From: Pocillopora damicornis | Taxonomy: Eukaryota | NCBI RefSeq assembly: GCF_003704095.1 | Contig: NW_020846701.1 | Coordinates: 1-64,000 of the forward strand | Direction of reading: 5' to 3' | Length of the DNA stretch: 64,000 nt | Part shown: positions 14,301 through 26,300 of the stretch, piece after piece | How the letters are laid out: the number at the start of each line of letters is the position of its first letter | Numbering within the stretch: the stretch's first letter is position 1 | The notes under the pieces: generated by a model | Database searches by the model: none | Told to the model about the DNA's origin: nothing | The model's input: only the letters and a program-made list of their open reading frames with translations | Program-made: the position numbers and the translations under genes

Positions 14301-17300
14301 GGCCAGGCCATGAACTCAGCGAAGAGCCTCCTTATAGTCATATTAAAGTGATGCCAATATATGAGAAGAATGGTAACAACTGGTATTGATTTGAATGAAC
14401 ATTCTCAAAGATTCCAATCTACTCTTCATGACACAGCAATCCTTGGCTTTTAAGGCCTAATAAGGCCGAAACAGCCGTACATGGCAGCTGACAGGATCGC
14501 ATCATTTTCCCTTGTTTCTTCTCCTTTTCTTCCCTCCTTCTCAATTTCTTGTTTGTTTATTCTTTTGTTTGTTTTCGATACTGGAGGCATAGTGTCATTA
14601 TCATTGTTGCCTTGATGGGCATTCTGTGTTGCACCACTTGTACCTGTCATCAAGGCAATAGGTAGTTTTTGATATATCAGAAGCAATGCTTGAAACATAA
14701 AAATCGGAGCTTGTCAATCTATTTGTAGTGGAAGTCTGTTAAAGTAGTATATGTAGGTAAGGATGCTACTGCCTGTGTCGTTTCACTAAGTTCTGAGGCT
14801 TTACCTTTTAATAACAGGTGATGTACACTGATAGACCACTTGTGGTGTGCGCTCCAACAGGTTCTGGCAAAACAGTAATTTTTGAGCTTGCTGTTATTCG
14901 TCTTCTTATGAGCTGTGAGGGAGGACTAAGTACAGCTAAAGTAGTTTATAGTAAGTGTCTATGTAGATACAACAATAAAATCTCAAAAAGCTGATAATTT
15001 AGCTTTATAAGGCTTGTCTTCCGGCCATTCACTAAATAAATTCAACATGAATTTGAAACGATTGCGTTCGTAAATAGAGGATGATGCAGTCACGGCGTAA
15101 GCGTTGCTAACCGCATCACGTTTCTTATATTATTTCCAACGTCATTTTCGTGTTAATTTTTTAACGCTCAGTTAAGATATAAATTAAGTCTTTCCGCCTG
15201 ATTTTGCTCATGCACAGTGGCCCCTATGAAGGCATTATGCAGTGAACGCTTCACTGACTGGTCGACTAAATTTGGACCGTTTGGCTTAAGATGCAAAGAA
15301 GTAACAGGCGATAGTGAGTTGGATGACCTTTATGAACTGCAGAGCGTCCATGTGATAATGACCACTCCTGTAAGTCCAACTATCGATCGTACTATAAGCA
15401 TACATGGACATTGGTCGCCTGACGAGCCAGTTAACCATTCATTTGTTTACTGAGTCAAAACTTCAGTAGGTAGTTGAGTCAATCAGCGAATTACTGTAAA
15501 GAGTTTCTGAAGCTCGCATTTCGAGCGTTAGCCCTTCGTCAGAGCAACTAGAAGGGGGCTTTGGAAAATCTTTACGGTGGTCAGTTTACATTATCAACTC
15601 AGTTGATAAAACCAATTATCTTAAATACCCCCCACTGACGTAGTACTGTAGTTTCTTTAGAAACTTACCCCCTTTCGACAGTCAGTAGTTTAGTTCGTGT
15701 GTCAGCCAGTCAGTAAGTTATTAGTTAGTTTTTCGATAACTTAGCCGGCCAGTCACTCAGTCAGTTGGTCTGTCAGCCAGTCAGTCAGTTAGTCATTAGA
15801 TCATTCAGCTGGCTAGCCATTCAGTCCGTTGGTTTGTCAGCCACTCAGTCAGTTATCAGTTAGTTATTCGATCAGTCAGTCAGGTAAAGTCTCAGCATCA
15901 TTGAAGTCTTTTTTTTCCCTTTCGATCAACAGGAAAAATGGGACAGCATGACAAGAAAGTGGAGAGACAACAGATCCCTCGTGCAGTCAGTCAAGCTTTT
16001 TCTCATTGATGAGGTACCTGACTTTGAACTGCAACAGGGTTATGACTGGACGCAATGAACGCGCAAATCCTACTGATCCAACATGATTAACATAATTTGT
16101 TTGATAGTAACCGGATTATTCATTACTTTATATCTAACTTCGAGAAAGGCTTGAACTTTTAACTTAACTAAAGGGCTTTATCGAGTTAAAACTTGAGAAA
16201 ATTCAAAATAGGAAGCAATTTGCTGTCCATACTCCCTAATATTTTAGGTTCATCTTATTAACGATGACGCAAGAGGAGCCACTGTTGAAGCTGTCATCAG
16301 CCGTATGAAGACCGTTCAATCCACTATGACCCGCTGCAGCACTTCAGGAAATACCAGCAGTCTTGGTAGAGCGGGCATGCGACTTTTGGCTATCTCAGCT
16401 ACCATACCAAACGTGGAAGATGTAAGTTTCCTCAGTACAGTCACTGGCCAAAATAGTTACATTTAGGTCTCTTCACACCCGAGGGCTTGATTTGGGAGAG
16501 AAACATGAATCGAGCTGAAGGAAAAACTTAACACAAGCAGATCACTCACTAAACAGAGGTAATAACGCTGTTTAGCAATTCTTCGATGGAAAAAAAGCTT
16601 CGACCATTATTTTTTCGGATAGATCAGGAAAATGACTGCTTTTTCGGGGAAACTTAGAGCTGAACTACGCTTCCTTGTGGGGTAAAATATGAGGTTAAGT
16701 GTTTATATTTTCGTTTAAAACAGATTTCAGCCTGGCTTGGAGGGATTGATTCTCCTGCATCTCACTACAGGTAAGAAATAATTTTCCTAAATTTTTTACG
16801 TTTAGTATTCTTCGTACACAAGAATTACGAAATGAAAGTTTTGTTCCAATTATGTAAAACTATTTGCTTTCTATAAGATGTAAAATAAAACAAAGAAAAA
16901 AGTATACAGGAGGGGAGGTTGTTTTCAATTCCATCCCTTCTTGCCCCTTCCAATGGGACTCTAGGACTGGGTGGAAAGTATATCACAAATATTATGGCGA
17001 AAGCCTAATTTCTTCTCCCTTTCCACCCCTTTCCCCACCTCTACCTCACCAAGCCATTCCCGTTTAGAATGATCTAAAAGCTCATTGAACACCTTCTTTT
17101 GCAGTATGGACGATTCACACCGACCAGTGAAACTACGTAAAGTTGTTCTTGGTTTTCCTAAGGGGAATAATTTCTCTGACTTCCGATTTGACTTGTCTCT
17201 GAATTATAAGTTGAGTGGCATCATTCAAACTTACTCAGATCGGAAACCTACTCTTGTGGTGAGCAAAATATACCGGATGGTTACAAATAAAAAGGTTGAG

Positions 17301-20300
17301 GTTTATCTTGTTTAAGGAAGGAGTTATTCGTGATAATGCATAAATATGTTTAGTGGTATGTATTCCTGCGTTGAAAAAATAATATTGCGGTTTATTCTAA
17401 ACCAGTTTTGTTCAACACGCAAGAGTGCTCAGCAAGCAGCACAGACGCTTATGAAAGACGCACGCTTTATCATGAACTCAGAACACAGACAGAGGTAAAC
17501 CGATTGAATTTTAATTGCTAGGACTGTAGAGTTTGGCCTGTTCCGTTTAGCAATTAGCTGCATAACTGAATGAGAAATGTATCAAAAAGTAAGTGTGGCT
17601 GTTTGTAATAGATCGCGAGTTAAACAACACTCGTTTATCATTAAGTCACTAACACCACAATTAGCCTTACATGTAACAGTGTCAGAGCCATGTTACATTT
17701 ACGACAGTGAAACAGTTATGTTACGACCCATTGAAGGTGAAGAAGAAATTTATTTACATCTACTACAACATTAATTATCTTATAGGCTTCAGAGGATTGC
17801 TAACTCTCTTCATGATTCTAAACTGAGAGGTGAGTGACATGCATTGAGCGAAACACTTTGCTTGTGATGAAAAGCCAATGAACAGGGGGTGAAGTTATTT
17901 TCAACAAAGCGGGGTCGAAACTTAATCAGTGAATTTGTGATTTGAATTAGTTTTCACACTATGTATCCGAGGTAGGAAAACACCTCGATGTCAGTCCTTT
18001 GAGTACTTGGACAATTTAATCGTGGTCTTGGTATTGTCTTTTGTCTTTTTTTTTCACATACGACTTTACTTTGCAGAGTTAGTGATGTGTGGGATTGGGT
18101 ACCACCATGCAGGACTCGATCCCACGGATCGAAGAAACATTGAAACAATGTTCATCAAAGGCGACTTGCCTGTACTGTGTAAGTATACACGGAGACTATC
18201 GGGTAGTCTTTGACCCTGAATAGTTTTTACTCATTCTTGCCTATCCATGTAGTAATCAGGGAGTTTGTCTCATATGAACCAAGTATACATCATAGCTCAT
18301 CAATCGGAGTTCTCTTAAAACAGCTTGGTTCGTTGACCATCAGCCCGCACGATCGGAAATTCTCTAGCTCAAAGAAACTCTGACTTCATTTTGGTCCCCT
18401 ACTCTAGCCAAATGTTTCACTTATGTCTTCCTTTACTTAGTGAAGAAGTTGTTACCTGAGTATTATAGTACTTTTGCTTTCCTTATTTTTCAGTTGCAAC
18501 TAGTACTCTGGCTGTAGGAGTAAGTTTTGTTTCTTTGTGTCTTTTTTATCGATTTCCCAATAAAAATACGATAGCATCTATAACATTTCATAGAGTGGAT
18601 CTTCAGAAGAAACCCATCTTTATTTGTCACTAAAAAAAGTAATATTCGTCAAAGATTAATTTGAACAAGAGTTTCATTGTCAGGTAAATCTTCCCGCTCA
18701 TCTGGTCATCATCAAGTCAACATCTCACTACGTCATGGGCGTGTTTCAAGAGTACTCAGAAACACAAATACTTCAGATGATTGGAAGGGCAGGAAGACCA
18801 CAGGTATTTTCACCGATACTAAACGTAGCAAGACTGTCATTTGTGGGAAAATCCTAAACATTCGTGAAACATGGCTGACTTCACCGTTGGCGTTTTGTTT
18901 GTTTGATTATTGCAAGGGTTTAATCATTTACCTGATAGGAAATGTTTACATCTCACAAACCAGTCTCATTGAATACGAATTTTCTTTTTCTTAGTTTGAT
19001 TCCTTCGCCACTGCAGTCATTTTGACAACAATTGCAAACAAGGTATGTTATACTGTGAAAGTTTTGTACGTTCCTCTCTCATTGAGGATTTTAATTTTAC
19101 ACATGAATCCAAATCAGAGCCGGAGGTCCTTTCCTCATTTTAAAGCTGTTAAGATTTCACAAATACCCTAACAAATAAGTAAGACTCTCAACAATCCACG
19201 ATTTATAATTGCCCGTATCTCCATACGGGCCGAGAAAGGGCATCTTATGTGACATAGTTTTAAGAGAGGAACAGATTATCCTCTCTTGGCAGAAATTAAA
19301 ACTTAAGTACGATTATGTGCGTTAACCTTAGTGAAAGAAACTGTGCAGTCTACCTTTTTTTATCATCCCTATTATTTTCTTAACTTGTAAGATTTTGAAC
19401 TCCTTATTTCTGCCTTGTGAGTCATTCGTTAAGGAAACAGGTTCAATTAACGAGGATGAACCGTGGTTTGTTGCAGGGGGTTTTGAAATAATTTTTGTCT
19501 CAGTCGCTCCAAAGGCAGAGAAGTGTAGACCACCAACTTCATTTCAGCGAAAACTGTTGCGAAAGCAATTTACTCGAGGAAAAAAAGAACAAGACAACTG
19601 AATCTAATGTTTCCGATCATTTTAATAACATATTTCTTTCAAATTCACAATTGACGTACGTGAAAGCATTACAAGCGATTGCAAAGAGCGCATACGACTT
19701 CCACATTCATAAATATCTTTAACAACACTTTTTCATATATATAAAAAAAAAGGAAATCAGTCTTAGAAGAAAAATGCTGGCACCTCGCGTCATGTAAATC
19801 ACCTGTTAGTAAAAGAACAATAACAAGAATAGGTAGTGAAAACCTTGAAAATAATGCGAATCACGGTTCAAGATTCTGTCTTTAAACCAAGGCTATCAAT
19901 ACCTCAACAATTCCAAGGCATAGTCGACTACTTCCTCCGTATGGATAAGTTTTAATGTATCACCCGACGCGCGTAGGGCAATCAGTTACTACAGCCTAGG
20001 CTGCATGAGATTTTGTACAGCTCAATCAGAAGAGAGCGTAGCTTGTTGCACTTTCGCTCTTAATTCTGCAAAGGGTCTCTTGTTTCTACATCTCCTGGGA
20101 GCTGATCGTGAAGTCTTAAGAATGATAACGCAACGAAGAATTATTTTAAGATGAGCATTCAAATGAATATTTATACAAACCTGCTGGGTCTGATTCAGCA
20201 CTTTGCATGGTAATCAAGGATTCACAGTTTCTGATGGATTAGTATCATATGCATGAGACTGCTCCACATAGGGTACTTGATAGGATTAGATGAGAAACTC

Positions 20301-23300
20301 TATGTAAGTGTCAAGTGTAATAACACTAAATTTCTAAACCACTAATTGTAGCTACAATGACATAATCATCTAAATTCCTAAGATTATGAATACCCCATTC
20401 GCAGACTATGCCTAATCATTTGATTTCTCAAAATGTAATTTTATTTACTCAAATAGTTGGCGTCCAAAGATTACTTAAACGGATAGAGAGAATATTTTCC
20501 TGACATACACGGTTATAAAGAGTAGAAAAGATTAGGTTGCTTATCAACGAACGCTCTAGGTATCTCATGCTTGGGTGTTAAGAGGAACTAGAATGTAAAT
20601 TACAAACCTGTTGGGTATGGTGATAATTGTTGGACTTGCATCGGGCCAGATCCAACGTAGTTATGAGGAAACGGATTCTGTTCCGCAGGTATCCAAAATC
20701 CCTGATCCATGTCAGGCATGTTGTTATTTGCCCATTTGTTTGGTCTAACGTTCATAGTTAACGGAGTGTTGGAAGACGAGGGCAGTGGACATGGTGCTAC
20801 TCCTGGTATAGTCCCCACAGGATTAACAGCACTTGGATTCTGTTCTGCAGAAATGTTTATCGGTGGGGGTGTTGGCCAATTGTTGGGGAGAAAAGGCCTT
20901 AACCGTGGTGCTTCTCCTGGAAACCGCCCCACAAGATTACAAGGATGTCGATTCTGTTTCGTAGGCACACCGTTTCCGTGGTCTGTATAAGCCATGTTGG
21001 TTGGCCATGCGTTGGGCACAAGGTTCATCGGTGTGGGAGTTGGCCAATTGTTGGGAAGAAAAGGCCTTGGCCATGGTGCTACTCCTGGAAACGGCCCTAC
21101 ATGTCTTCTAGGATGTGGATTCTGTCTAGTAGAGAAACTGTTTCCTCGGTCTGTGTAGGCCATATTCGTATTTGGCCATGCGTTGGGCGCAGTGTTAATC
21201 GGTGGCTGAGTTTGACGAGAGTGAGAGGCAGGATACAGTACCCTTGGTGTTTCCACCCTGCAGTGTCTCCCTATAAAAGAGAAAAAATATATTATCTATT
21301 TATTATGATGGCAACCGGTATCACGTATACGTTGCTCGACTTTGTATTTAACTGCTCTCCATCTCCTTACATTCCGTTGAATCGTGTTGCACTGACTCAG
21401 TTTTGTTAAGGGGTATGCATAGACATGTGCTCTATTGCCATACCCTCGTATTCCGTTGTGTTATAACTGTAGTAAATTGCGACCTGATGCAGCACTCTCC
21501 TGGGTAGCTTTGTTGGCTTTCTGGCGTTCTTTTTAACAGATTTCGCCGTGCCTGGTTGAGAGTTATTTGTTCTGTTGCATTCAATTTGTGCAGTCCTCTG
21601 CACTACGTTTTGGCCTAGTAGCCTCTGTTGCGTTGAATGAGCAAGTTGCATTATGCTGCATTCACCCCGGTAAAAATCTTACATCGTAATGAAGCGAGAA
21701 AAGTCACGTAATAACAGTTACGTGGCATTACTTCGCACGCTGCTGAGTTATATTGAATAATACATTTGTGTTGTGTCCCTCCCATCTGAGCTGGGTGGCG
21801 TTTTGTTGCATTCCTCTGCATCGTGCTGCGCTTAAAAGTTCTCCGTTGCGCTGAGTCACCGAGTTCCATTAAGCTGAATTTTACCCTAGACTATACTTAG
21901 TGTGTATGATCTTAAGCTGCTTCGCTTAGTCTGTGCTCTTACTTGATCTCTCCTACTTACCTGGTGGGCCGGGACAGATCCTTGGCGGGAGATAACTTGG
22001 TTTGGGATGGCTCCACGGAGGTGCCTCCAACCCAAGCATTTGTGGAGGACCGCATGAACGCATTCGCCGCCGCTCTTGGGCTATCGGCTTGTCGTAACGT
22101 CTGCCTATCGATGCTTTTTTCTTGGGTTGCACCTCTTTATTTGGATAAAAATTCTGTAGATAAATTATGCCACAGGAAGCCCGTTAGCATAAATTCCTCG
22201 TCAATCACATCTAGAATTAGATTATTTAAAGGAATTTTGAACCTTTTTTTTTAGGAAGACTGCTTTAATATCAATTAAACATTTTAGGCTCTGGGTAGAG
22301 ATTGTGGAAGATAACGATATTCGTTTTCTATAGTTAGATAAAGAAATGACTAGCTCCAAAAGAAGAAGAGGTTAATTTCAAAAGATTCACACAATCTGCT
22401 GAAAAAAAAATTCTAGACCTTAGTTGCTGGTCGAAATTCTCTTGCTAGAGGGTTCAATGTGGTCCCGTTGACACCACTGTAAAAGTAAACAAAACGAAGA
22501 GTATGTTAAGTTGAATCGTGACTTTGTAATCTAGTATTTTGAAAGACAGAACTATTCTCGACACCCTTCTCCGCTGTACTCTTACCCTCCAACCTAAAAC
22601 TCAATCACCGTCTAACATCTCCGTTAATTTTTCAGAACATAATCTGAGTAAGGATTGTTTGCCACTAAGCATTTGCAGGTCCTACTCCTTGAACAGACCA
22701 GCTTCACAGTATAATCAGTGAAAATTTCGGCCGTGAAATCTCTTACCTTTCAGAACTGGTGTGCGCAATATATTCACCGTGGCTGTTATGTTGGGAAACA
22801 CCAGAGTTCTGCGTCAAAATTTGTAAAAAAAAAAAAACCATAAAATGACTATGATTAAGTAATTTGATCCTAAGTTGTTGTTTTTCCATTATTCTGTCAA
22901 ATCTCACGTATTAGATTGTTTCCTAAAAAAGCAAAAATTTATTGCCTGAAAAACGAATGGAGGCCATATCTACCTTTCTAGAAAAATAGCAAATTGTCAA
23001 ACTTGATAAAACGTCTTTCACGTCACCTGTAGGAGGCTCAATTTTTTCTTCAGAAAAGTGAGAAAATGTTTAACTCAATAATAACTCTTTCTTGCGACCT
23101 GTAACTTGCCTCAATTCAGGTTTACAACCACTGTTATTACCTTTTTCACACGAACAAATTCATGGGTTGGTACCCGTTCAGCTGTCTTTCTGCTGCACTC
23201 TGCATCTTTTTCGTTCCCTCTTTCGGGGTCACACACGTGAACCACCTGTGTAGAACGTGGAAACAAACGTGTCATGGTGATTTTTCCCATAACAAACATT

Positions 23301-26300
23301 GTCTTCTAATTTGAATTATGGATCTCTTACTCAAGAACGAAATGGAGGCTTAATTCACCCTTATAGAAAAGTAAGAAAATGTGAACTTAACGATACCTCT
23401 TTCCTGTCATCTGTATCCCTGCTCGACACAGGTTCAAAACCATTGTCATCAATTTTTTCCTCACGAGAGCAATCGGGGAATGGTACCTGTTCAGCTATCT
23501 CTTTGCTGCACTCCGCATCTTTCTCGTTCCCCATTTCGGAGTCATGCATCTGAACCACCTGTGTGGAACGTGGAAAAAAATGTGTCATGTTGATCTGTCC
23601 CAAACCAAACATTGCCTTCCAATTTGAATTATGGATCCCTTACTTAAGAAAGAAATGTAGATTCAATTTATCCTTTTAAAAAAGAAGGAAAATGTGAAAC
23701 TTCTTAATACCTCTCTCCTGTCGCATGTATCTCGGCTGAATTCAGGTTTACACCCACTGTTAGTTGCCTTTTGCGCAAGAGCGGACTCAGGAGACTGTAC
23801 TCGTTCAGCCTTCTCTCTGCTGCACTCTGTATCTTTCTCATTTCCTCTTTCGGGATCTTGCTCCTGAGCCACCTGTGTGGAACATGGAAACAAGTGTGTC
23901 GTAGTGATTTTTCTCTTAACAAATATTGTCTTCCAATATGAATTATGGATCCCTTACTTCAGAACGAAATGGAGGCTCAATTATCCCTGTAGCAATATAG
24001 GAAAACGTTAAACTTAATGATATCTCTTTCCTGTCATCTGTATCCCATGTCAACTCAGGTTCACAACCTTTGTTATTTACTTTTTCAAAAAGTTAATGAC
24101 AGTGGTTGTGAACCTGCGTGCATTCGGGGTATGGTACTCGTTCAGCTTAACCGCCTGTGTGGAAGTGGAAACAAACGTCTCATAGTGATCTGTCCCACGT
24201 CAAACATCGTCTTCCAATTTGAATTATGTATATCCTTCTGCTAAGAATGAAAAGTAGGCCCAATCTACCCTTTTAAAAAAGAAGATGACGTTAAACCTGG
24301 TAATACCTCTTTCTTATCACATGTATCCCGGCTAAACTCAGGTTCACAACCATTGCTATTGACGTTTTCCACACGAGTGCACTCTGGGGTTGGTACTCTT
24401 TCAGCCTTCTCCCCGCACTCTGCATCTTTCTCGTTTCCTCTTTTGGTATCTTGCACCTGAACCGCCTGTGTCGAATGTGGAAACAAACGCGTGGTAATGA
24501 TTTTCCCCATGGATCCCTTACTTCAGAACGAAATGGATGCTCAATTTACCGTTTTAGAAAGACCGAAATGTTAAACTTGATAATACCTCTTTCCTGTCAT
24601 CTATATCCCGGTTCAACTTAGGTTTACAACCACTTTTATCAGTGTCTTCCCCTCGGGCCCCTTCGGGGAATGGCACTCGTTCAGCCATCACTTTGCTGCA
24701 CCCTACATCTTTCTCGTTCTCTCTTTCGGGGTTATGCCCCTGGACCACCTGTGTTAAACGTAGAAAACAAACGTGTTGTAGTGATGTTTACTATAACAAA
24801 CATTGTCTACCAATCTGGACATGGATCCTTACTTCAGAATGGAATGGAGGATTCATTTAATTATTCAGAAAATTAGGAAAATATTAAACTTAATAACACC
24901 TCTTTCCTGTCAACTTTATCCCAACTCAACTTAGGATTACACCCATTGATATTTTTCTGGATCGATCGATCGCCCTATCTGTCAGACTAGTTGTCTGAAA
25001 GTGTGTATTTGGCTTCAATTTCTAAGTATCCATGTAAAGAGTACTAGTGTTGTGCACTTAATTTGATTTTTGGTCTAATGTGAAGAAAAAAGGGGGTTTT
25101 AGGTGGCTCTCGCACTGCCAGGGTCGGTGGTGATTTTGGTGCTCCTTTTCGAAAACTCTGATAATACGAAATTGAGATAAATTGTATACCTTTTCTACTA
25201 CGTCGCTTAAAGCATCCGTGTCATCACTTCCGATAAAACCCTTCATGATTTCACTGACGGCGAATAACGCCTGCCACAGTGTGACGAAAGGCATAGTCGC
25301 AGATAGTGAGAAAGGTTGAGAAAAGTTTGAATGTGTCTTTGTTAAGTGACGTCACAGAGGTAATTGATGCTGCGCGTGCGGTTTTCTAATCGTTAATTGG
25401 TGAAATTAGCTGGCTTTTCGTCACTGAAACTGTTACTAAGTTAACCAAAAAAGTTAGCCGATTGCATGAAAATAAACAATAACTGGGACTTCAGTCTATA
25501 TTACTCGCCCTTTATTAAGCGGTTACTGATTAAATTCCCCTAATTCACGTCCCATATGTCCTGTAATTAAATCTCTGTAATCTCCTCATCTCTATCAAGT
25601 GGATTCCGACATCCTTTCCTCTTCCTAAGTTTTACAATTATTTTGCTATGCATGTCTTTGAAACGGTGACCTTTAAAAATAACAAATTAATTTAATGGAT
25701 TCAAAACCACCGGGCTATCACATCTTACGCGGCTATGGTAGATTTGATTTGATTGATCAACTTTCATTCGAAATCCTTTACTTCTCTTTGATGCTATAAT
25801 TTATTTTGCAGGAAAAGTATACCGGCCTTCTTGAAGGCACTCAGAAATTGGAGAGCAGGTCTGTTTCGCATGTGAAGCTTACTAAATGTTTCGATTTGCT
25901 TTAGCTCTTTTGTTGTGCATAAAGAAAAGAAGTCCTTAGCGCGCACAGAATACTTACCTTATTTACAATAGACAGAGGGTCCAGAGAATGTCAACTCTCC
26001 TATTATTTCTCATTCGCAGACTTTGTTTTATTAGATTATTGGTCATTTGCTGTCTAATGTTCTAGCTGTCAAATGAATGGCTGTTTTTCATAGCCCTTAG
26101 CTCATGATATTTGTTTTAAGTCCTCTGTGAGGTGTGGTAAACTTATCCTTTTTACCTTTTTTACTGATTGAATAATGGTCAATTGTTTATTGCAGTTTGC
26201 ACCATCACCTAATCGAGCACTTGAACGCAGAAATAGTCCTTAACACTATCACAGACGTTTCTATTGCCATAGAGTGGTTGAAGTCCACCTTCTTGTATAT

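What the first reader, a model, noticed from the sequence alone, without database searches (positions are those of the whole stretch)
20440..25354. Antisense gene nested inside the meiotic helicase HFM1, encoding a PAM2-motif disordered protein
Seen in sequence: the 6.8-kb HFM1 intron 19043-25811, far longer than its neighbours, holds ten minus-strand exons that splice into an open ~612-aa frame with an upstream CRE and a downstream AATAAA. One 58-nt exon encodes TTLNPLAREFRP. Established: this fits the PAM2 consensus L-x-P-x-A-x-x-F-x-P that binds the MLLE domain of poly(A)-binding protein (as in ataxin-2, PAIP1/2, eRF3, Tob). Inference: a lineage-specific PABP-binding low-complexity protein, perhaps a germline translational regulator or RNP-granule component, either co-regulated or transcriptionally interfering with a meiosis-specific host.
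Basis: partly seen in the sequence, partly recalled or inferred. Interest (0 to 1): 0.8.

Follow-up and report, generated by a model that had tools for sequence, protein, structure and literature searches.

The report
Nested coral gene for PAM2 protein
A real, spliced and expressed gene lies backwards inside one long intron of a meiotic-type helicase gene of the coral Pocillopora damicornis; it encodes a disordered protein of a small family known only from pocilloporid corals, whose conserved short motif should dock it onto poly(A)-binding protein.

Summary
The 58-nt exon encodes TTLNPLAREFRP, and the CRE is at 25347-25354.

Corrections:
- The gene does not end at AATAAA 20440. That site lies in a spliced intron.
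- An eleventh coding exon (20275-20181) gives about 630 aa instead of 612, followed by a 3'UTR intron.

What it is: one of at least 3-4 intact paralogs in P. damicornis, plus decayed fragments. A Stylophora pistillata homolog (LOC111345291) has the same architecture and two PAM2 copies that pass Pfam's PAM2 threshold.

Evidence on the motif:
- Across homologs the PAM2-defining residues change only synonymously, while the flanks change freely.
- A PABPC-MLLE/peptide co-fold gave weak support: 0.39 against 0.04 for the best control.
- The protein is otherwise predicted disordered, apart from a conserved N-terminal helix.

Not supported: a germline role or co-regulation with the host. The gene is seen in adult-colony poly(A) libraries, and it shares a conserved CRE promoter with paralogs at other loci. 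The long intron is explained by insertion of a gene duplicate of at least 5.8 kb.

Verdict: a new member of a known kind, of moderate interest. The scan had already noted the exon array (s1-782974) and a six-MLLE protein (s1-765086).

The parts
19043..25811 (+). Host intron of the plus-strand Ski2/Brr2-type (HFM1-like) helicase gene. It lies between the RecA2 exon (QMIGRAGRPQ at 18774) and the exons for the winged-helix and Sec63 domains.
   Evidence: Read from the sequence; Pfam DEAD, SNRNP200_wHTH and Sec63 on flanking plus-strand exons; only one GxGKT on the plus strand. A Tara Pocillopora scaffold, L033, is colinear with window 22325-10739.
25347..25354 (.). Palindromic CRE TGACGTCA, 53-60 nt upstream of the ATG. 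It sits in a promoter block (about 25300-25400) conserved among four paralogs.
   Evidence: the CRE is invariant at -50/-60 in the window, C1114, C464 and C130 copies, although coding dS is 0.6-1.0 for the older pairs.
25190..25340 (-). Exon 1: short 5'UTR (RNA contigs reach about 25325-25340) and 35 codons from the ATG at 25294. It encodes the N-terminal helix MPFVTLWQALFAV...
   Evidence: Joint 24748|25190 in X1, X7 and X11. The first 13 residues are identical in Stylophora P0065. AF2 predicts a helix at residues 3-18 in paralog P0050.
24587..24748 (-). Exon 2, charged Cys-containing repeat copy (54 aa, phase 0-0).
24307..24465 (-). Exon 3, repeat copy (53 aa, phase 0-0).
24024..24154 (-). 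Dead repeat copy: 131 nt, with stops and an internal inversion at 24053-24119. The RNA skips it.
   Evidence: joint 23872|24307; inverted repeat I2.
23711..23872 (-). Exon 4, repeat copy (54 aa).
23397..23558 (-). Exon 5, repeat copy (54 aa).
23141..23245 (-). Exon 6, a shortened repeat copy (35 aa). An internal GT donor is used upstream of the frameshifted second half.
   Evidence: Joint 22808|23141 in X1 and X7.
22747..22808 (-). Exon 7 (62 nt), a Ser/His-rich linker.
   Evidence: 56% identical to Stylophora over 16 aa.
22419..22476 (-). Exon 8 (58 nt): the PAM2 exon, GVNGTTLNPLAREFRPATK. The motif core lies at 22463-22428.
   Evidence: Joints on both sides in X1 and X7; Pfam PAM2 is the only hit, 13.7 bits, E 0.054; conservation.
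21961..22153 (-). Exon 9 (193 nt): a basic/Pro-rich segment holding the most conserved motif of the family (RRRMRSCGPPQMLG.EAPPWSHP).
   Evidence: dN/dS is 0.21 against C1114; 70% identical to Stylophora.
20608..21270 (-). Exon 10 (663 nt): Pro/Asn/Trp-rich repeats of about 56 aa (168-nt period).
   Evidence: Indels among alleles are 3, 6 and 9 nt. dN/dS is 0.4-0.8.
20440..20445 (-). It lies inside intron 10 (20607-20276).
   Evidence: joints 20275|20608 in X7 and 20265|20608 in X1 and X7.
20181..20275 (-). Exon 11: the last 19 codons plus the split codon, stop TGA at 20216-20214, and the start of the 3'UTR.
   Evidence: The RefSeq model of the C1114 paralog (P0002) uses the same exon 10 to 11 splice and the same tail.
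19600..19811 (-). Probable terminal 3'UTR exon after the 3'UTR intron 20180-19812. There is an ATTAAA near 19625. The end was not mapped.
   Evidence: The X7 loose end at 20179 resembles the window sequence just below 19811. This part is inferred.

Best explanation
This is an independently transcribed, protein-coding gene of Pocillopora damicornis. It lies antisense inside one intron of an HFM1-like helicase gene.

Origin (inferred). A complete gene copy of at least 5.8 kb, with promoter, introns and 3' end, was inserted into what was an ordinary intron of about 1 kb.

Product. The protein has about 630 aa and is almost wholly disordered. It has three short conserved islands:
- an N-terminal amphipathic helix;
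- a canonical PAM2 motif, TLNPLAREFRP;
- a basic/proline motif in exon 9.
These islands are separated by two fast-evolving repeat modules whose copy number varies. One is a set of charged Cys/Glu/Lys exon repeats. The other is a set of Pro/Asn/Trp repeats.

Mechanism (inferred). The PAM2 docks into the MLLE domain of cytoplasmic poly(A)-binding protein, and possibly into the coral's other MLLE proteins. This places the protein on polyadenylated mRNPs, where it competes with other PAM2 factors. The other conserved islands would bring a second partner.

What is shown and what is not. The gene, its splicing, its coding constraint, its family and the selective conservation of the motif are shown. 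Binding, and whether the effect on mRNA is positive or negative, are inferred.
For: Transcription and splicing. Ten GT..AG introns on the minus strand are seen in RNA contigs. X1 (poly(A) library) has all of them. X7 has six (introns 1 and 6-10) and X11 has the first. In X1, intron bins and the host-intron flanks have zero depth.

Coding.
- The frame is open across 11 exons.
- All three exonic indels among alleles are multiples of 3, and none of the four intronic indels is.
- dN/dS is 0.21 for exon 9 and 0.27-0.63 for the older paralog pairs.

Family.
- Paralogs lie at C1114, C464 and C130, with decayed fragments elsewhere.
- Some paralogs are annotated as XP_027038615.1, RMX60288.1 and XP_027058786.1.
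- Stylophora LOC111345291 (P0065) has the same architecture.

PAM2.
- The motif fits LNxxAxEFxP, the consensus quoted in PMC7356810.
- PAM2 is the only Pfam hit for any exon.
- P0065 passes the PAM2 gathering score with 27.5 bits against a cut-off of 20, E 2e-6, in two copies.
- In the motif core, changes among three homologs are 6 synonymous and 1 nonsynonymous, and the one nonsynonymous change is at an x position. In the flanks they are 4 synonymous and 8 nonsynonymous. Fisher p = 0.04.
- TLNPLAREFRP is identical in Stylophora, while the repeats are only about 30% identical.

Partner. A canonical PABPC MLLE exon is present in the genome. The co-fold of that MLLE with the PAM2 exon scored ipSAE 0.39 against 0.04 for the best of 3 controls. 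The runs agree in at least 80% of contacts and the partner pLDDT is at least 53. The tool's verdict is 'weak support'.

Disorder. Every segment except exon 1 falls below the Uversky boundary. AF2 on paralog P0050 gives mean pLDDT 44.5 and only helix 3-18.

Own promoter. The CRE block is invariant in four paralogs.

Insertion. Homology to the C1114 copy spans window 25644-19884, within the intron 19043-25811.
Against: - The window exon alone is below Pfam's PAM2 threshold (13.7 bits against 20).
- The co-fold pass is in the weak band. The peptide chain carried 10 intron-coded residues at its N-terminus and one at its C-terminus. PAM2-MLLE complexes have been solved, so the pass may be memory of those structures.
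- The C130 paralog has no PAM2 exon, so the motif is not indispensable to the family.
- Introns flanking the PAM2 exon are also fairly conserved among copies.
- Exon 10 shows 10 nonsynonymous to 1 synonymous difference against a near-identical Pocillopora scaffold. Much of the protein is therefore barely constrained.
- There is no peptide or proteomic evidence.
- Contigs give no strand or level. Strand rests on the splice dinucleotides.
- The hydrophobic N-terminus could be a targeting or secretion signal, which would take the protein away from PABP.
Confidence: 0.6

Rival explanations
1. The gene and motif are as described, but the physiological partner is another MLLE protein of the coral and not PABPC. 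Candidates are the stand-alone protein with six tandem MLLE domains at C1208 and the UBR5-type MLLE at C2498. The family would then be clients or adaptors of an MLLE scaffold and not regulators at the poly(A) tail.
For: The genome scan with PF00658 finds a tandem array of at least 6 MLLE domains at C1208, four of them in one 369-aa open frame, and a UBR5-like MLLE. Stylophora carries two PAM2 copies in tandem, which suits a multivalent partner.
Against: The motif is a near-perfect match to the PABPC-type consensus. The only pair I could test was PABPC MLLE, and it gave a weak pass. PAM2 peptides generally bind several MLLE domains, so this rival is not exclusive of the main reading.
Confidence: 0.15
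2. The gene is real and coding, but the PAM2-like stretch is conserved for a reason unrelated to MLLE. For example, the N-terminal hydrophobic helix could be a signal or anchor, and the protein could be an extracellular or membrane low-complexity protein (matrix, mucus or skeleton-associated) with Cys-bearing acidic repeats.
For: The N-terminus MPFVTLWQALFAVS is hydrophobic, with an A-x-S pattern before a Glu. The repeat exons carry 13 Cys and are acidic. Automated names of the paralogs are those of proline-rich wall proteins. One paralog lacks the motif.
Against: Peak hydropathy is only 1.83 over 11 residues, with a Gln in the middle and no basic n-region. The first 13 residues are identical between genera, which is unusual for a signal peptide. 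The six consensus-defining PAM2 residues are held by purifying selection while Leu uses three different codons. The Stylophora protein passes the curated PAM2 threshold twice over. I could not run a signal-peptide predictor.
Confidence: 0.15
3. One reading: a germline translational regulator or RNP-granule component that is co-regulated with, or transcriptionally interferes with, the meiosis-specific host gene.
For: The gene lies antisense inside an HFM1-like gene. PAM2 proteins do include germline regulators (general knowledge).
Against: Spliced transcripts are seen in coral and marine poly(A) or oligo-dT libraries from several studies, while host-intron sequence around the gene is uncovered in X1. 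The promoter block with the CRE is shared with paralogs at other loci. The copy looks like a recent insertion of a duplicate, with dS 0.1-0.3 against C1114. No tissue-resolved or stage-resolved data were available.
Confidence: 0.05
4. Not a functional protein gene: a transcribed pseudogene, a long non-coding RNA, or part of a transposable element whose open frame is accidental.
For: The family has many decayed fragments (C2274, C224, C3619, C2729, C2865). Repeat exons evolve at dN/dS of about 1.7 and exon 10 shows 10:1 nonsynonymous changes against a close relative. No database held a full-length model of this copy.
Against: A 1,890-nt frame is kept open across 11 exons. The dead repeat copy is skipped and a damaged copy is rescued by an internal donor that keeps phase 0. 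Exonic indels are all multiples of three. dN/dS is below 1 for exons 1, 9 and 10 in the older comparisons. No exon has a transposon domain in Pfam. No terminal repeats flank the unit. The architecture is conserved in another genus.
Confidence: 0.03

Closest known systems
Stylophora pistillata uncharacterized protein LOC111345291 isoform X4 (P0065), and the P. damicornis paralogs XP_027038615.1 / RMX60288.1 (C1114) and XP_027058786.1 (C464)
   Same: Same architecture in the same order: MPFVTLWQALFAV helix, charged Cys-bearing repeats, PAM2, the RSCGPP..MLG.EAPPWSHP motif, then Pro/Asn/Trp repeats. Exon 9 is 70% identical and the PAM2 core 11 of 12 identical to Stylophora. The window gene is 80-86% identical in exons 1, 9 and 10 to the C1114 copy and 72% in exon 2.
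   Different: Stylophora has two PAM2 copies in tandem and different repeat numbers. The P. damicornis models carry composition-driven names and show no PAM2. In C1114 the exon falls in an assembly gap. In the C464 RefSeq model the 58-nt exon is read in another frame. The window copy is the one nested in the helicase intron, and I found no full-length model of it.
Canonical PAM2 proteins of animals (ataxin-2, PAIP1, PAIP2, eRF3/GSPT, Tob, PAN3, GW182/TNRC6, USP10, LARP4)
   Same: A 12-residue PAM2 in a disordered region that fits LNxxAxEFxP, with the Leu, Asn, Ala, Phe and Pro that contact MLLE pockets (consensus as quoted in PMC7356810). The expected mode of action is docking on the C-terminal MLLE of PABPC.
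   Different: There is no other domain of any of these families: no LSm, eRF3 GTPase, BTG, RRM or La module (Pfam). Position 6 is Leu where Asn is common, from my own knowledge of the motif. The family is restricted to pocilloporid corals as far as these databases show.
GW182/TNRC6 silencing domain
   Same: A disordered protein that combines a PAM2 with many Trp residues set in low-complexity repeats.
   Different: The Trp residues here sit in N-x-W-P or P-W-P contexts and not in G/S/T-W contexts. There is no Ago-binding GW region, UBA or RRM, and no sequence similarity was detected. This is a functional analogy only, and untested.
Fungal PAM2/PAM2L adaptors such as Ustilago maydis Upa1, with the multi-MLLE protein Rrm4 (PMC4466420, PMC11572963, seen)
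   Same: Lineage-specific disordered adaptors that use PAM2-type motifs to dock on MLLE domains, in an organism that also has a multi-MLLE protein.
   Different: There is no FYVE, ankyrin or RING domain here and no homology. A link to the coral six-MLLE protein is speculative.
Nested intronic genes of animals
   Same: A complete transcription unit with its own promoter, on the opposite strand, inside a host intron.
   Different: Here the origin can be read. The inserted duplicate accounts for at least 5.76 kb of the 6.77-kb intron.

Membership tests
PAM2 motif proteins (Pfam PF07145) | 12-residue motif fitting xxLNxxAxEFxP | tested here: met
   TTLNPLAREFRP at 22463-22428 on the minus strand. 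It is the only match to L[NS]xxAx[ED]FxP in six frames of the window. Consensus as quoted in PMC7356810.
PAM2 motif proteins (Pfam PF07145) | Score at or above Pfam's gathering threshold (20 bits) | tested here: inconclusive
   Window exon ORF: 13.7 bits, E 0.054, below the cut-off but the only family hit. The Stylophora homolog P0065 scores 27.5 bits, E 2e-6, in two stretches, above the cut-off. The joined window protein was not scanned.
PAM2 motif proteins (Pfam PF07145) | Motif-defining residues conserved among homologs while the flanks vary | tested here: met
   Window, C464, metagenome homolog L037 and Stylophora all keep LNPLAREF.P. Changes are 6 synonymous to 1 nonsynonymous in the core and 4 to 8 in the flanks, p = 0.04. 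A divergent transcript in X1 keeps the core, with one synonymous change.
PAM2 motif proteins (Pfam PF07145) | Motif lies in an accessible, disordered region | tested here: met
   Charge-hydropathy analysis puts exons 2-11 below the fold boundary. AF2 on paralog P0050 gives pLDDT 44.5 with no structure after residue 18 (single sequence, so weak).
PAM2 motif proteins (Pfam PF07145) | Direct binding to the MLLE domain of PABPC | not testable with these tools
   Only an in-silico co-fold was run: 0.39 against a best control of 0.04, 'weak support'. This needs ITC or pulldown.
Nested antisense intronic gene | Whole transcription unit, with its own promoter, inside one intron of a host gene on the other strand | tested here: met
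   The ATG at 25294 through the stop at 20216 lies within 19043-25811. Splice dinucleotides define the minus strand. The promoter block is shared with paralogs elsewhere. The poly(A) site was not mapped but is expected near 19600.
HFM1/Mer3 helicase (the host) | Single Ski2/Brr2-type cassette: DEAD, Helicase_C, winged helix, Sec63 | tested here: met
   Pfam DEAD, SNRNP200_wHTH and Sec63 on plus-strand exons. One GxGKT and one QxxGRxGR on the plus strand of the 64-kb window.
HFM1/Mer3 helicase (the host) | Orthology to HFM1 and not to ASCC3/SLH1 or SNRNP200/Brr2 | tested here: inconclusive
   One exon gives only 48, 38 and 25 bits to SLH1, ASCC3 and SNRNP200 chains, which is paralog-level similarity. 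No HFM1 sequence was at hand for a reciprocal test, and the atlas look-up was uninformative.
Transposable-element ORF | Transposase, reverse transcriptase, integrase or other TE domain; terminal repeats | tested here: not met
   No exon has such a Pfam domain. No terminal inverted or direct repeats flank the unit. Copies keep their introns, so they are DNA duplicates and not retrocopies.
GW182/TNRC6 | GW/WG repeats for Argonaute binding, UBA and RRM domains, silencing domain | tested here: not met
   No Pfam domain other than PAM2 in the window exons or P0065. The Trp contexts are NxWP or PWP.

The most novel reading that the evidence does not exclude
Pocilloporid corals have evolved their own MLLE-PAM2 docking system. 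In this reading a fast-evolving family of disordered PAM2 adaptors (this gene and its paralogs) links polyadenylated mRNPs, or the stand-alone six-MLLE scaffold, to a second partner. That partner would be bound by the invariant N-terminal helix or by the Trp-rich repeats. This would be functionally parallel to the fungal Rrm4/Upa1 mRNA-transport system, or to recruitment of deadenylases by GW182 through Trp motifs.
Probability: 0.12. Interest if true: 0.7.

Novelty: new member of a known kind. Interest (0 to 1): 0.4.

Why it matters
It adds a family of PAM2-bearing proteins, known so far only from pocilloporid corals, to the short list of factors that dock on poly(A)-binding protein. The family is effectively invisible in the current P. 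damicornis annotation. One paralog's motif exon lies in an assembly gap, another's is read in the wrong frame, and I found no full-length model of this copy. The locus also shows how a nested gene and an outsized intron can arise from a gene-sized duplication. It is also a clear example of a disordered protein in which three short islands are held fixed while repeat modules expand, die and are rescued. With the coral's six-MLLE protein, it gives a concrete and cheap binding experiment on post-transcriptional control in a reef-building coral. It is not a new kind of system.

Tried and rejected
Searches that gave nothing useful:
- Pfam on every exon found nothing but the weak PAM2 hit.
- The ESM atlas gave no usable hit for exon 10 and nothing discriminating for the host exon.
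- A profile search of exon 10 against 1.84 billion representatives returned only short family fragments, most of them Pocillopora-like. The large hits (P0013 and others) are bacterial Calx-like repeat proteins that match one low-complexity stretch, and I rejected them as spurious.
- The word search with exon 9 gave two fragments only.
- A literature search for the accessions, and for Pocillopora with PAM2, found nothing.
- A search of the own genome with a host helicase exon found only itself.

Readings rejected:
- The transposon reading: no TE domains and no terminal repeats.

Complex prediction returned 'weak support', not a clean pass.

Steps left out on purpose:
- The joined spliced protein has no reference, so it was never submitted to a search. 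Exons were searched one by one by reference, and the natural database proteins P0050, P0051 and P0065 stood in for full-length queries.
- I did not fill or look up the N gaps that hide the PAM2 exon of C1114 and exon 9 of C464. For that reason I did not analyse locus L036 and did not fetch the contig of P0034.

Full report
**The observation**

The minus strand of 19000-26000 holds an ATG at 25294. That ATG is preceded by TGACGTCA at 25354-25347. Downstream lie a tandem array of 313-bp exon-plus-intron units, a 58-nt exon encoding GVNGTTLNPLAREFRPATK, and a long Pro/Asn/Trp-rich exon.

Public RNA runs hold about a third of the sampled words of 20440-25354 at best, which is the share expected for exons only. 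Four runs of unrecorded library type, presumably DNA, hold 63-78%.

I laid contigs of four RNA runs from four studies on 19900-25800. They gave joints with CT..AC ends on the + strand, which is GT..AG on the minus strand, at every predicted intron:
- X1 (poly(A) library) shows all of them.
- X7 shows six (introns 1 and 6-10).
- X11 (oligo-dT) shows the first.
- X2 (random-primed) is mostly unspliced.

In X1, the bins over introns 1 and 9 and over the host intron upstream of 25415 have zero depth. The signal there is therefore mature mRNA of this gene and not host pre-mRNA or DNA.

Phase tracking of the RNA-defined exons gives one open frame.

The RNA instead splices 20608 to 20275. This adds exon 11 (20275-20181), with the stop at 20216-20214, for about 630 aa.

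A loose end in X7 shows a further 3'UTR intron (20180-19812). AATAAA at 20440 therefore lies in intron 10.

One repeat copy (24154-24024) is dead, contains an inversion, and is skipped. Another copy (23245-23141) is frameshifted in its second half, and is used through an internal donor that keeps phase 0.

**It is a coding gene**

- The frame stays open for 1,890 nt across 11 exons.
- The three exonic indels among alleles are 3, 6 and 9 nt. The four intronic ones are 1, 14, 8 and 1 nt.
- dN/dS is 0.21 for exon 9 against the closest paralog.
- dN/dS is 0.27-0.63 for exons 1, 9 and 10 against the older paralogs.
- Constraint is otherwise loose. dN/dS is about 1.7 in a repeat exon. Exon 10 shows 10 nonsynonymous to 1 synonymous difference against a 96-99% identical Tara Pocillopora scaffold, which is colinear with the window from 22325 to 10739.

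**Organism and family**

The genome is Pocillopora damicornis. Database proteins on contigs of exactly the lengths of C1114 and C464 are XP_027038615.1, RMX60288.1 and XP_027058786.1 of that species.

The gene has paralogs at three other loci:
- C1114, with 80-86% amino-acid identity.
- C464.
- C130.

Decayed fragments lie at C2274 (two), C224, C3619, C2729 and C2865. The copies keep their introns, so they are DNA duplicates.

The annotated paralogs carry names driven by composition ('vegetative cell wall protein gp1-like', 'SH3 domain-containing protein C23A1.17-like'), and neither model shows a PAM2:
- In C1114 the exon falls in a run of N.
- In the C464 RefSeq model the 58-nt exon is read in another frame, because the neighbouring exons fall in gaps.

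I did not fill those gaps. I found no full-length model of the window copy.

Outside Pocillopora, the only full-length relative is Stylophora pistillata LOC111345291 isoform X4 (P0065, 514 aa). It has the same order of parts and the same first 13 residues. Its exon-9 motif is 70% identical, its repeats are 30-40% identical, and it carries two PAM2 copies in tandem.

Three short metagenome or Logan contigs (L034, L035, L037) are further homologs. None of the three corresponds to a P. damicornis sequence:
- The proteins of L034 and L035 match the genome at only 61-68%.
- L037 is about 78% identical in DNA to the window.
- L035 matches the Stylophora protein.

Nothing was found outside Pocilloporidae. 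The caveat is that only exon 10 was searched without a length filter.

**The PAM2 motif**

The motif fits the canonical LNxxAxEFxP consensus (PMC7356810).

Pfam results:
- PAM2 is the only family hit for any exon, at 13.7 bits and E 0.054, below the 20-bit cut-off.
- Homolog L037 gives 14.8 bits.
- The Stylophora protein passes with 27.5 bits and E 2e-6.

The strict motif occurs once in six frames of the window. LNPLAREF-coding DNA occurs four times in the 234-Mb assembly, all in this family, and never in the reversed control.

Among the window, C464 and L037:
- The core shows 6 synonymous changes, with Leu using three different codons, and 1 nonsynonymous change at a free position.
- The nine flanking codons show 4 synonymous and 8 nonsynonymous changes.
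- Fisher p = 0.04.

A roughly 10% divergent transcript in X1 keeps the core, with one synonymous change. The C130 paralog lacks the exon.

None of them is met.

**Partner**

The genome encodes three kinds of MLLE:
- A canonical PABPC MLLE (C1056).
- A UBR5-like MLLE (C2498).
- A gene with at least six tandem MLLE domains (C1208). The scan had already noted this last one (s1-765086).

I co-folded the PABPC MLLE exon with the PAM2 exon ORF. That 30-aa window reference includes 10 intron-coded residues at its N-terminus and one at its C-terminus. The results:
- It scored 0.39, against 0.04 for the best of three controls.
- The runs agreed in at least 80% of contacts.
- Partner pLDDT was at least 53.
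- The tool calls this weak support and warns that solved look-alike complexes can be remembered.

**The rest of the protein**

All segments except exon 1 fall on the disordered side of the charge-hydropathy boundary. AF2 on paralog P0050 gives mean pLDDT 44.5, with a single helix at residues 3-18 (single sequence).

The conserved islands are the N-terminal helix, the PAM2 and the exon-9 motif. The repeat modules vary in number between paralogs and species.

**Regulation and origin**

A promoter block that includes the CRE is invariant in four paralogs, 50-60 nt upstream of the ATG. RNA contigs reach about 25325-25340, so the position of the CRE relative to the transcription start is unresolved.

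Homology to the C1114 copy runs from 25644 to 19884, where a gap in C1114 ends it. That covers at least 5.76 kb of the 6.77-kb intron. A gene-sized insertion therefore explains the long intron.

**The host**

The host shows the following features:
- DEAD, SNRNP200-type winged helix and Sec63 domains.
- A single GxGKT on the plus strand of the window.
- Only paralog-level similarity to SLH1, ASCC3 and Brr2.

It is HFM1-like, but orthology is not proven.

**Verdict**

This is a real nested gene and a new member of the PAM2 class. It belongs to a family known only from pocilloporid corals that the current annotation hides. PABP docking is likely but untested, and there is no support for a germline or host-coupled role.

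The joined spliced protein was not submitted to any search, because it has no reference. Exons were searched by reference.

Noticed in passing
window 23022-24962: Tandem array of about 313-bp exon-plus-intron units. It holds four intact phase-0 exons, one dead copy with an internal inversion (24053-24119), one copy rescued by an internal donor, and partial copies at both ends. Another finding of this scan covers the same thing (s1-782974).
   Followed up: partly
G000:C1208:804460-807484 (L028, L038), minus strand: A gene with at least six tandem MLLE domains, four of them in one 369-aa open frame. It is a possible alternative docking partner for this PAM2 family. The scan noted it earlier as s1-765086.
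   Followed up: partly
P0050 / P0051 (C1114 and C464 paralogs; L019, L020): Public gene models of the paralogs hide the PAM2. Skipping exons 7+8 (120 nt) or 7+9 (255 nt) keeps the frame, so models built across assembly gaps stay open. They lose the motif, or read the 58-nt exon in another frame (WRQREQAEPSSKRISSIIS).
   Followed up: partly
window about 25300-25400 and the paralog promoters (L019, L020, L021): A conserved block upstream of the CRE (TAACGAT.AGAAAAC.GC.CGCGCA.C.TCAATTA) is shared by all four paralogs. No factor has been assigned to it.
   Followed up: no
window 55697-55704: The second and only other TGACGTCA in the window. It is unrelated to this gene.
   Followed up: no
window 21271-21960 (intron 9): A-rich intron with long open stretches. 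It is conserved with the C1114 copy but is the most indel-rich part against the Tara scaffold (91% identity). It may hold a small repeat element.
   Followed up: no
window 15558-15675: A short element of about 115 bp in a host intron, with copies at two places on contig C1114 (about 151370 and 168650). Probably a small interspersed repeat.
   Followed up: no
L034 (metagenome scaffold, 614 bp): An exon-10 homolog that is at most 68% identical to any copy in the P. damicornis assembly carries an in-frame stop (PFPHN*IGSG). It is either a pseudogene copy or a sequencing error.
   Followed up: no
window 20180-19812: A 3'UTR intron begins only about 35 nt after the stop codon, which is too close to be expected to trigger nonsense-mediated decay. 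It was seen in one run (X7) through a loose end.
   Followed up: partly
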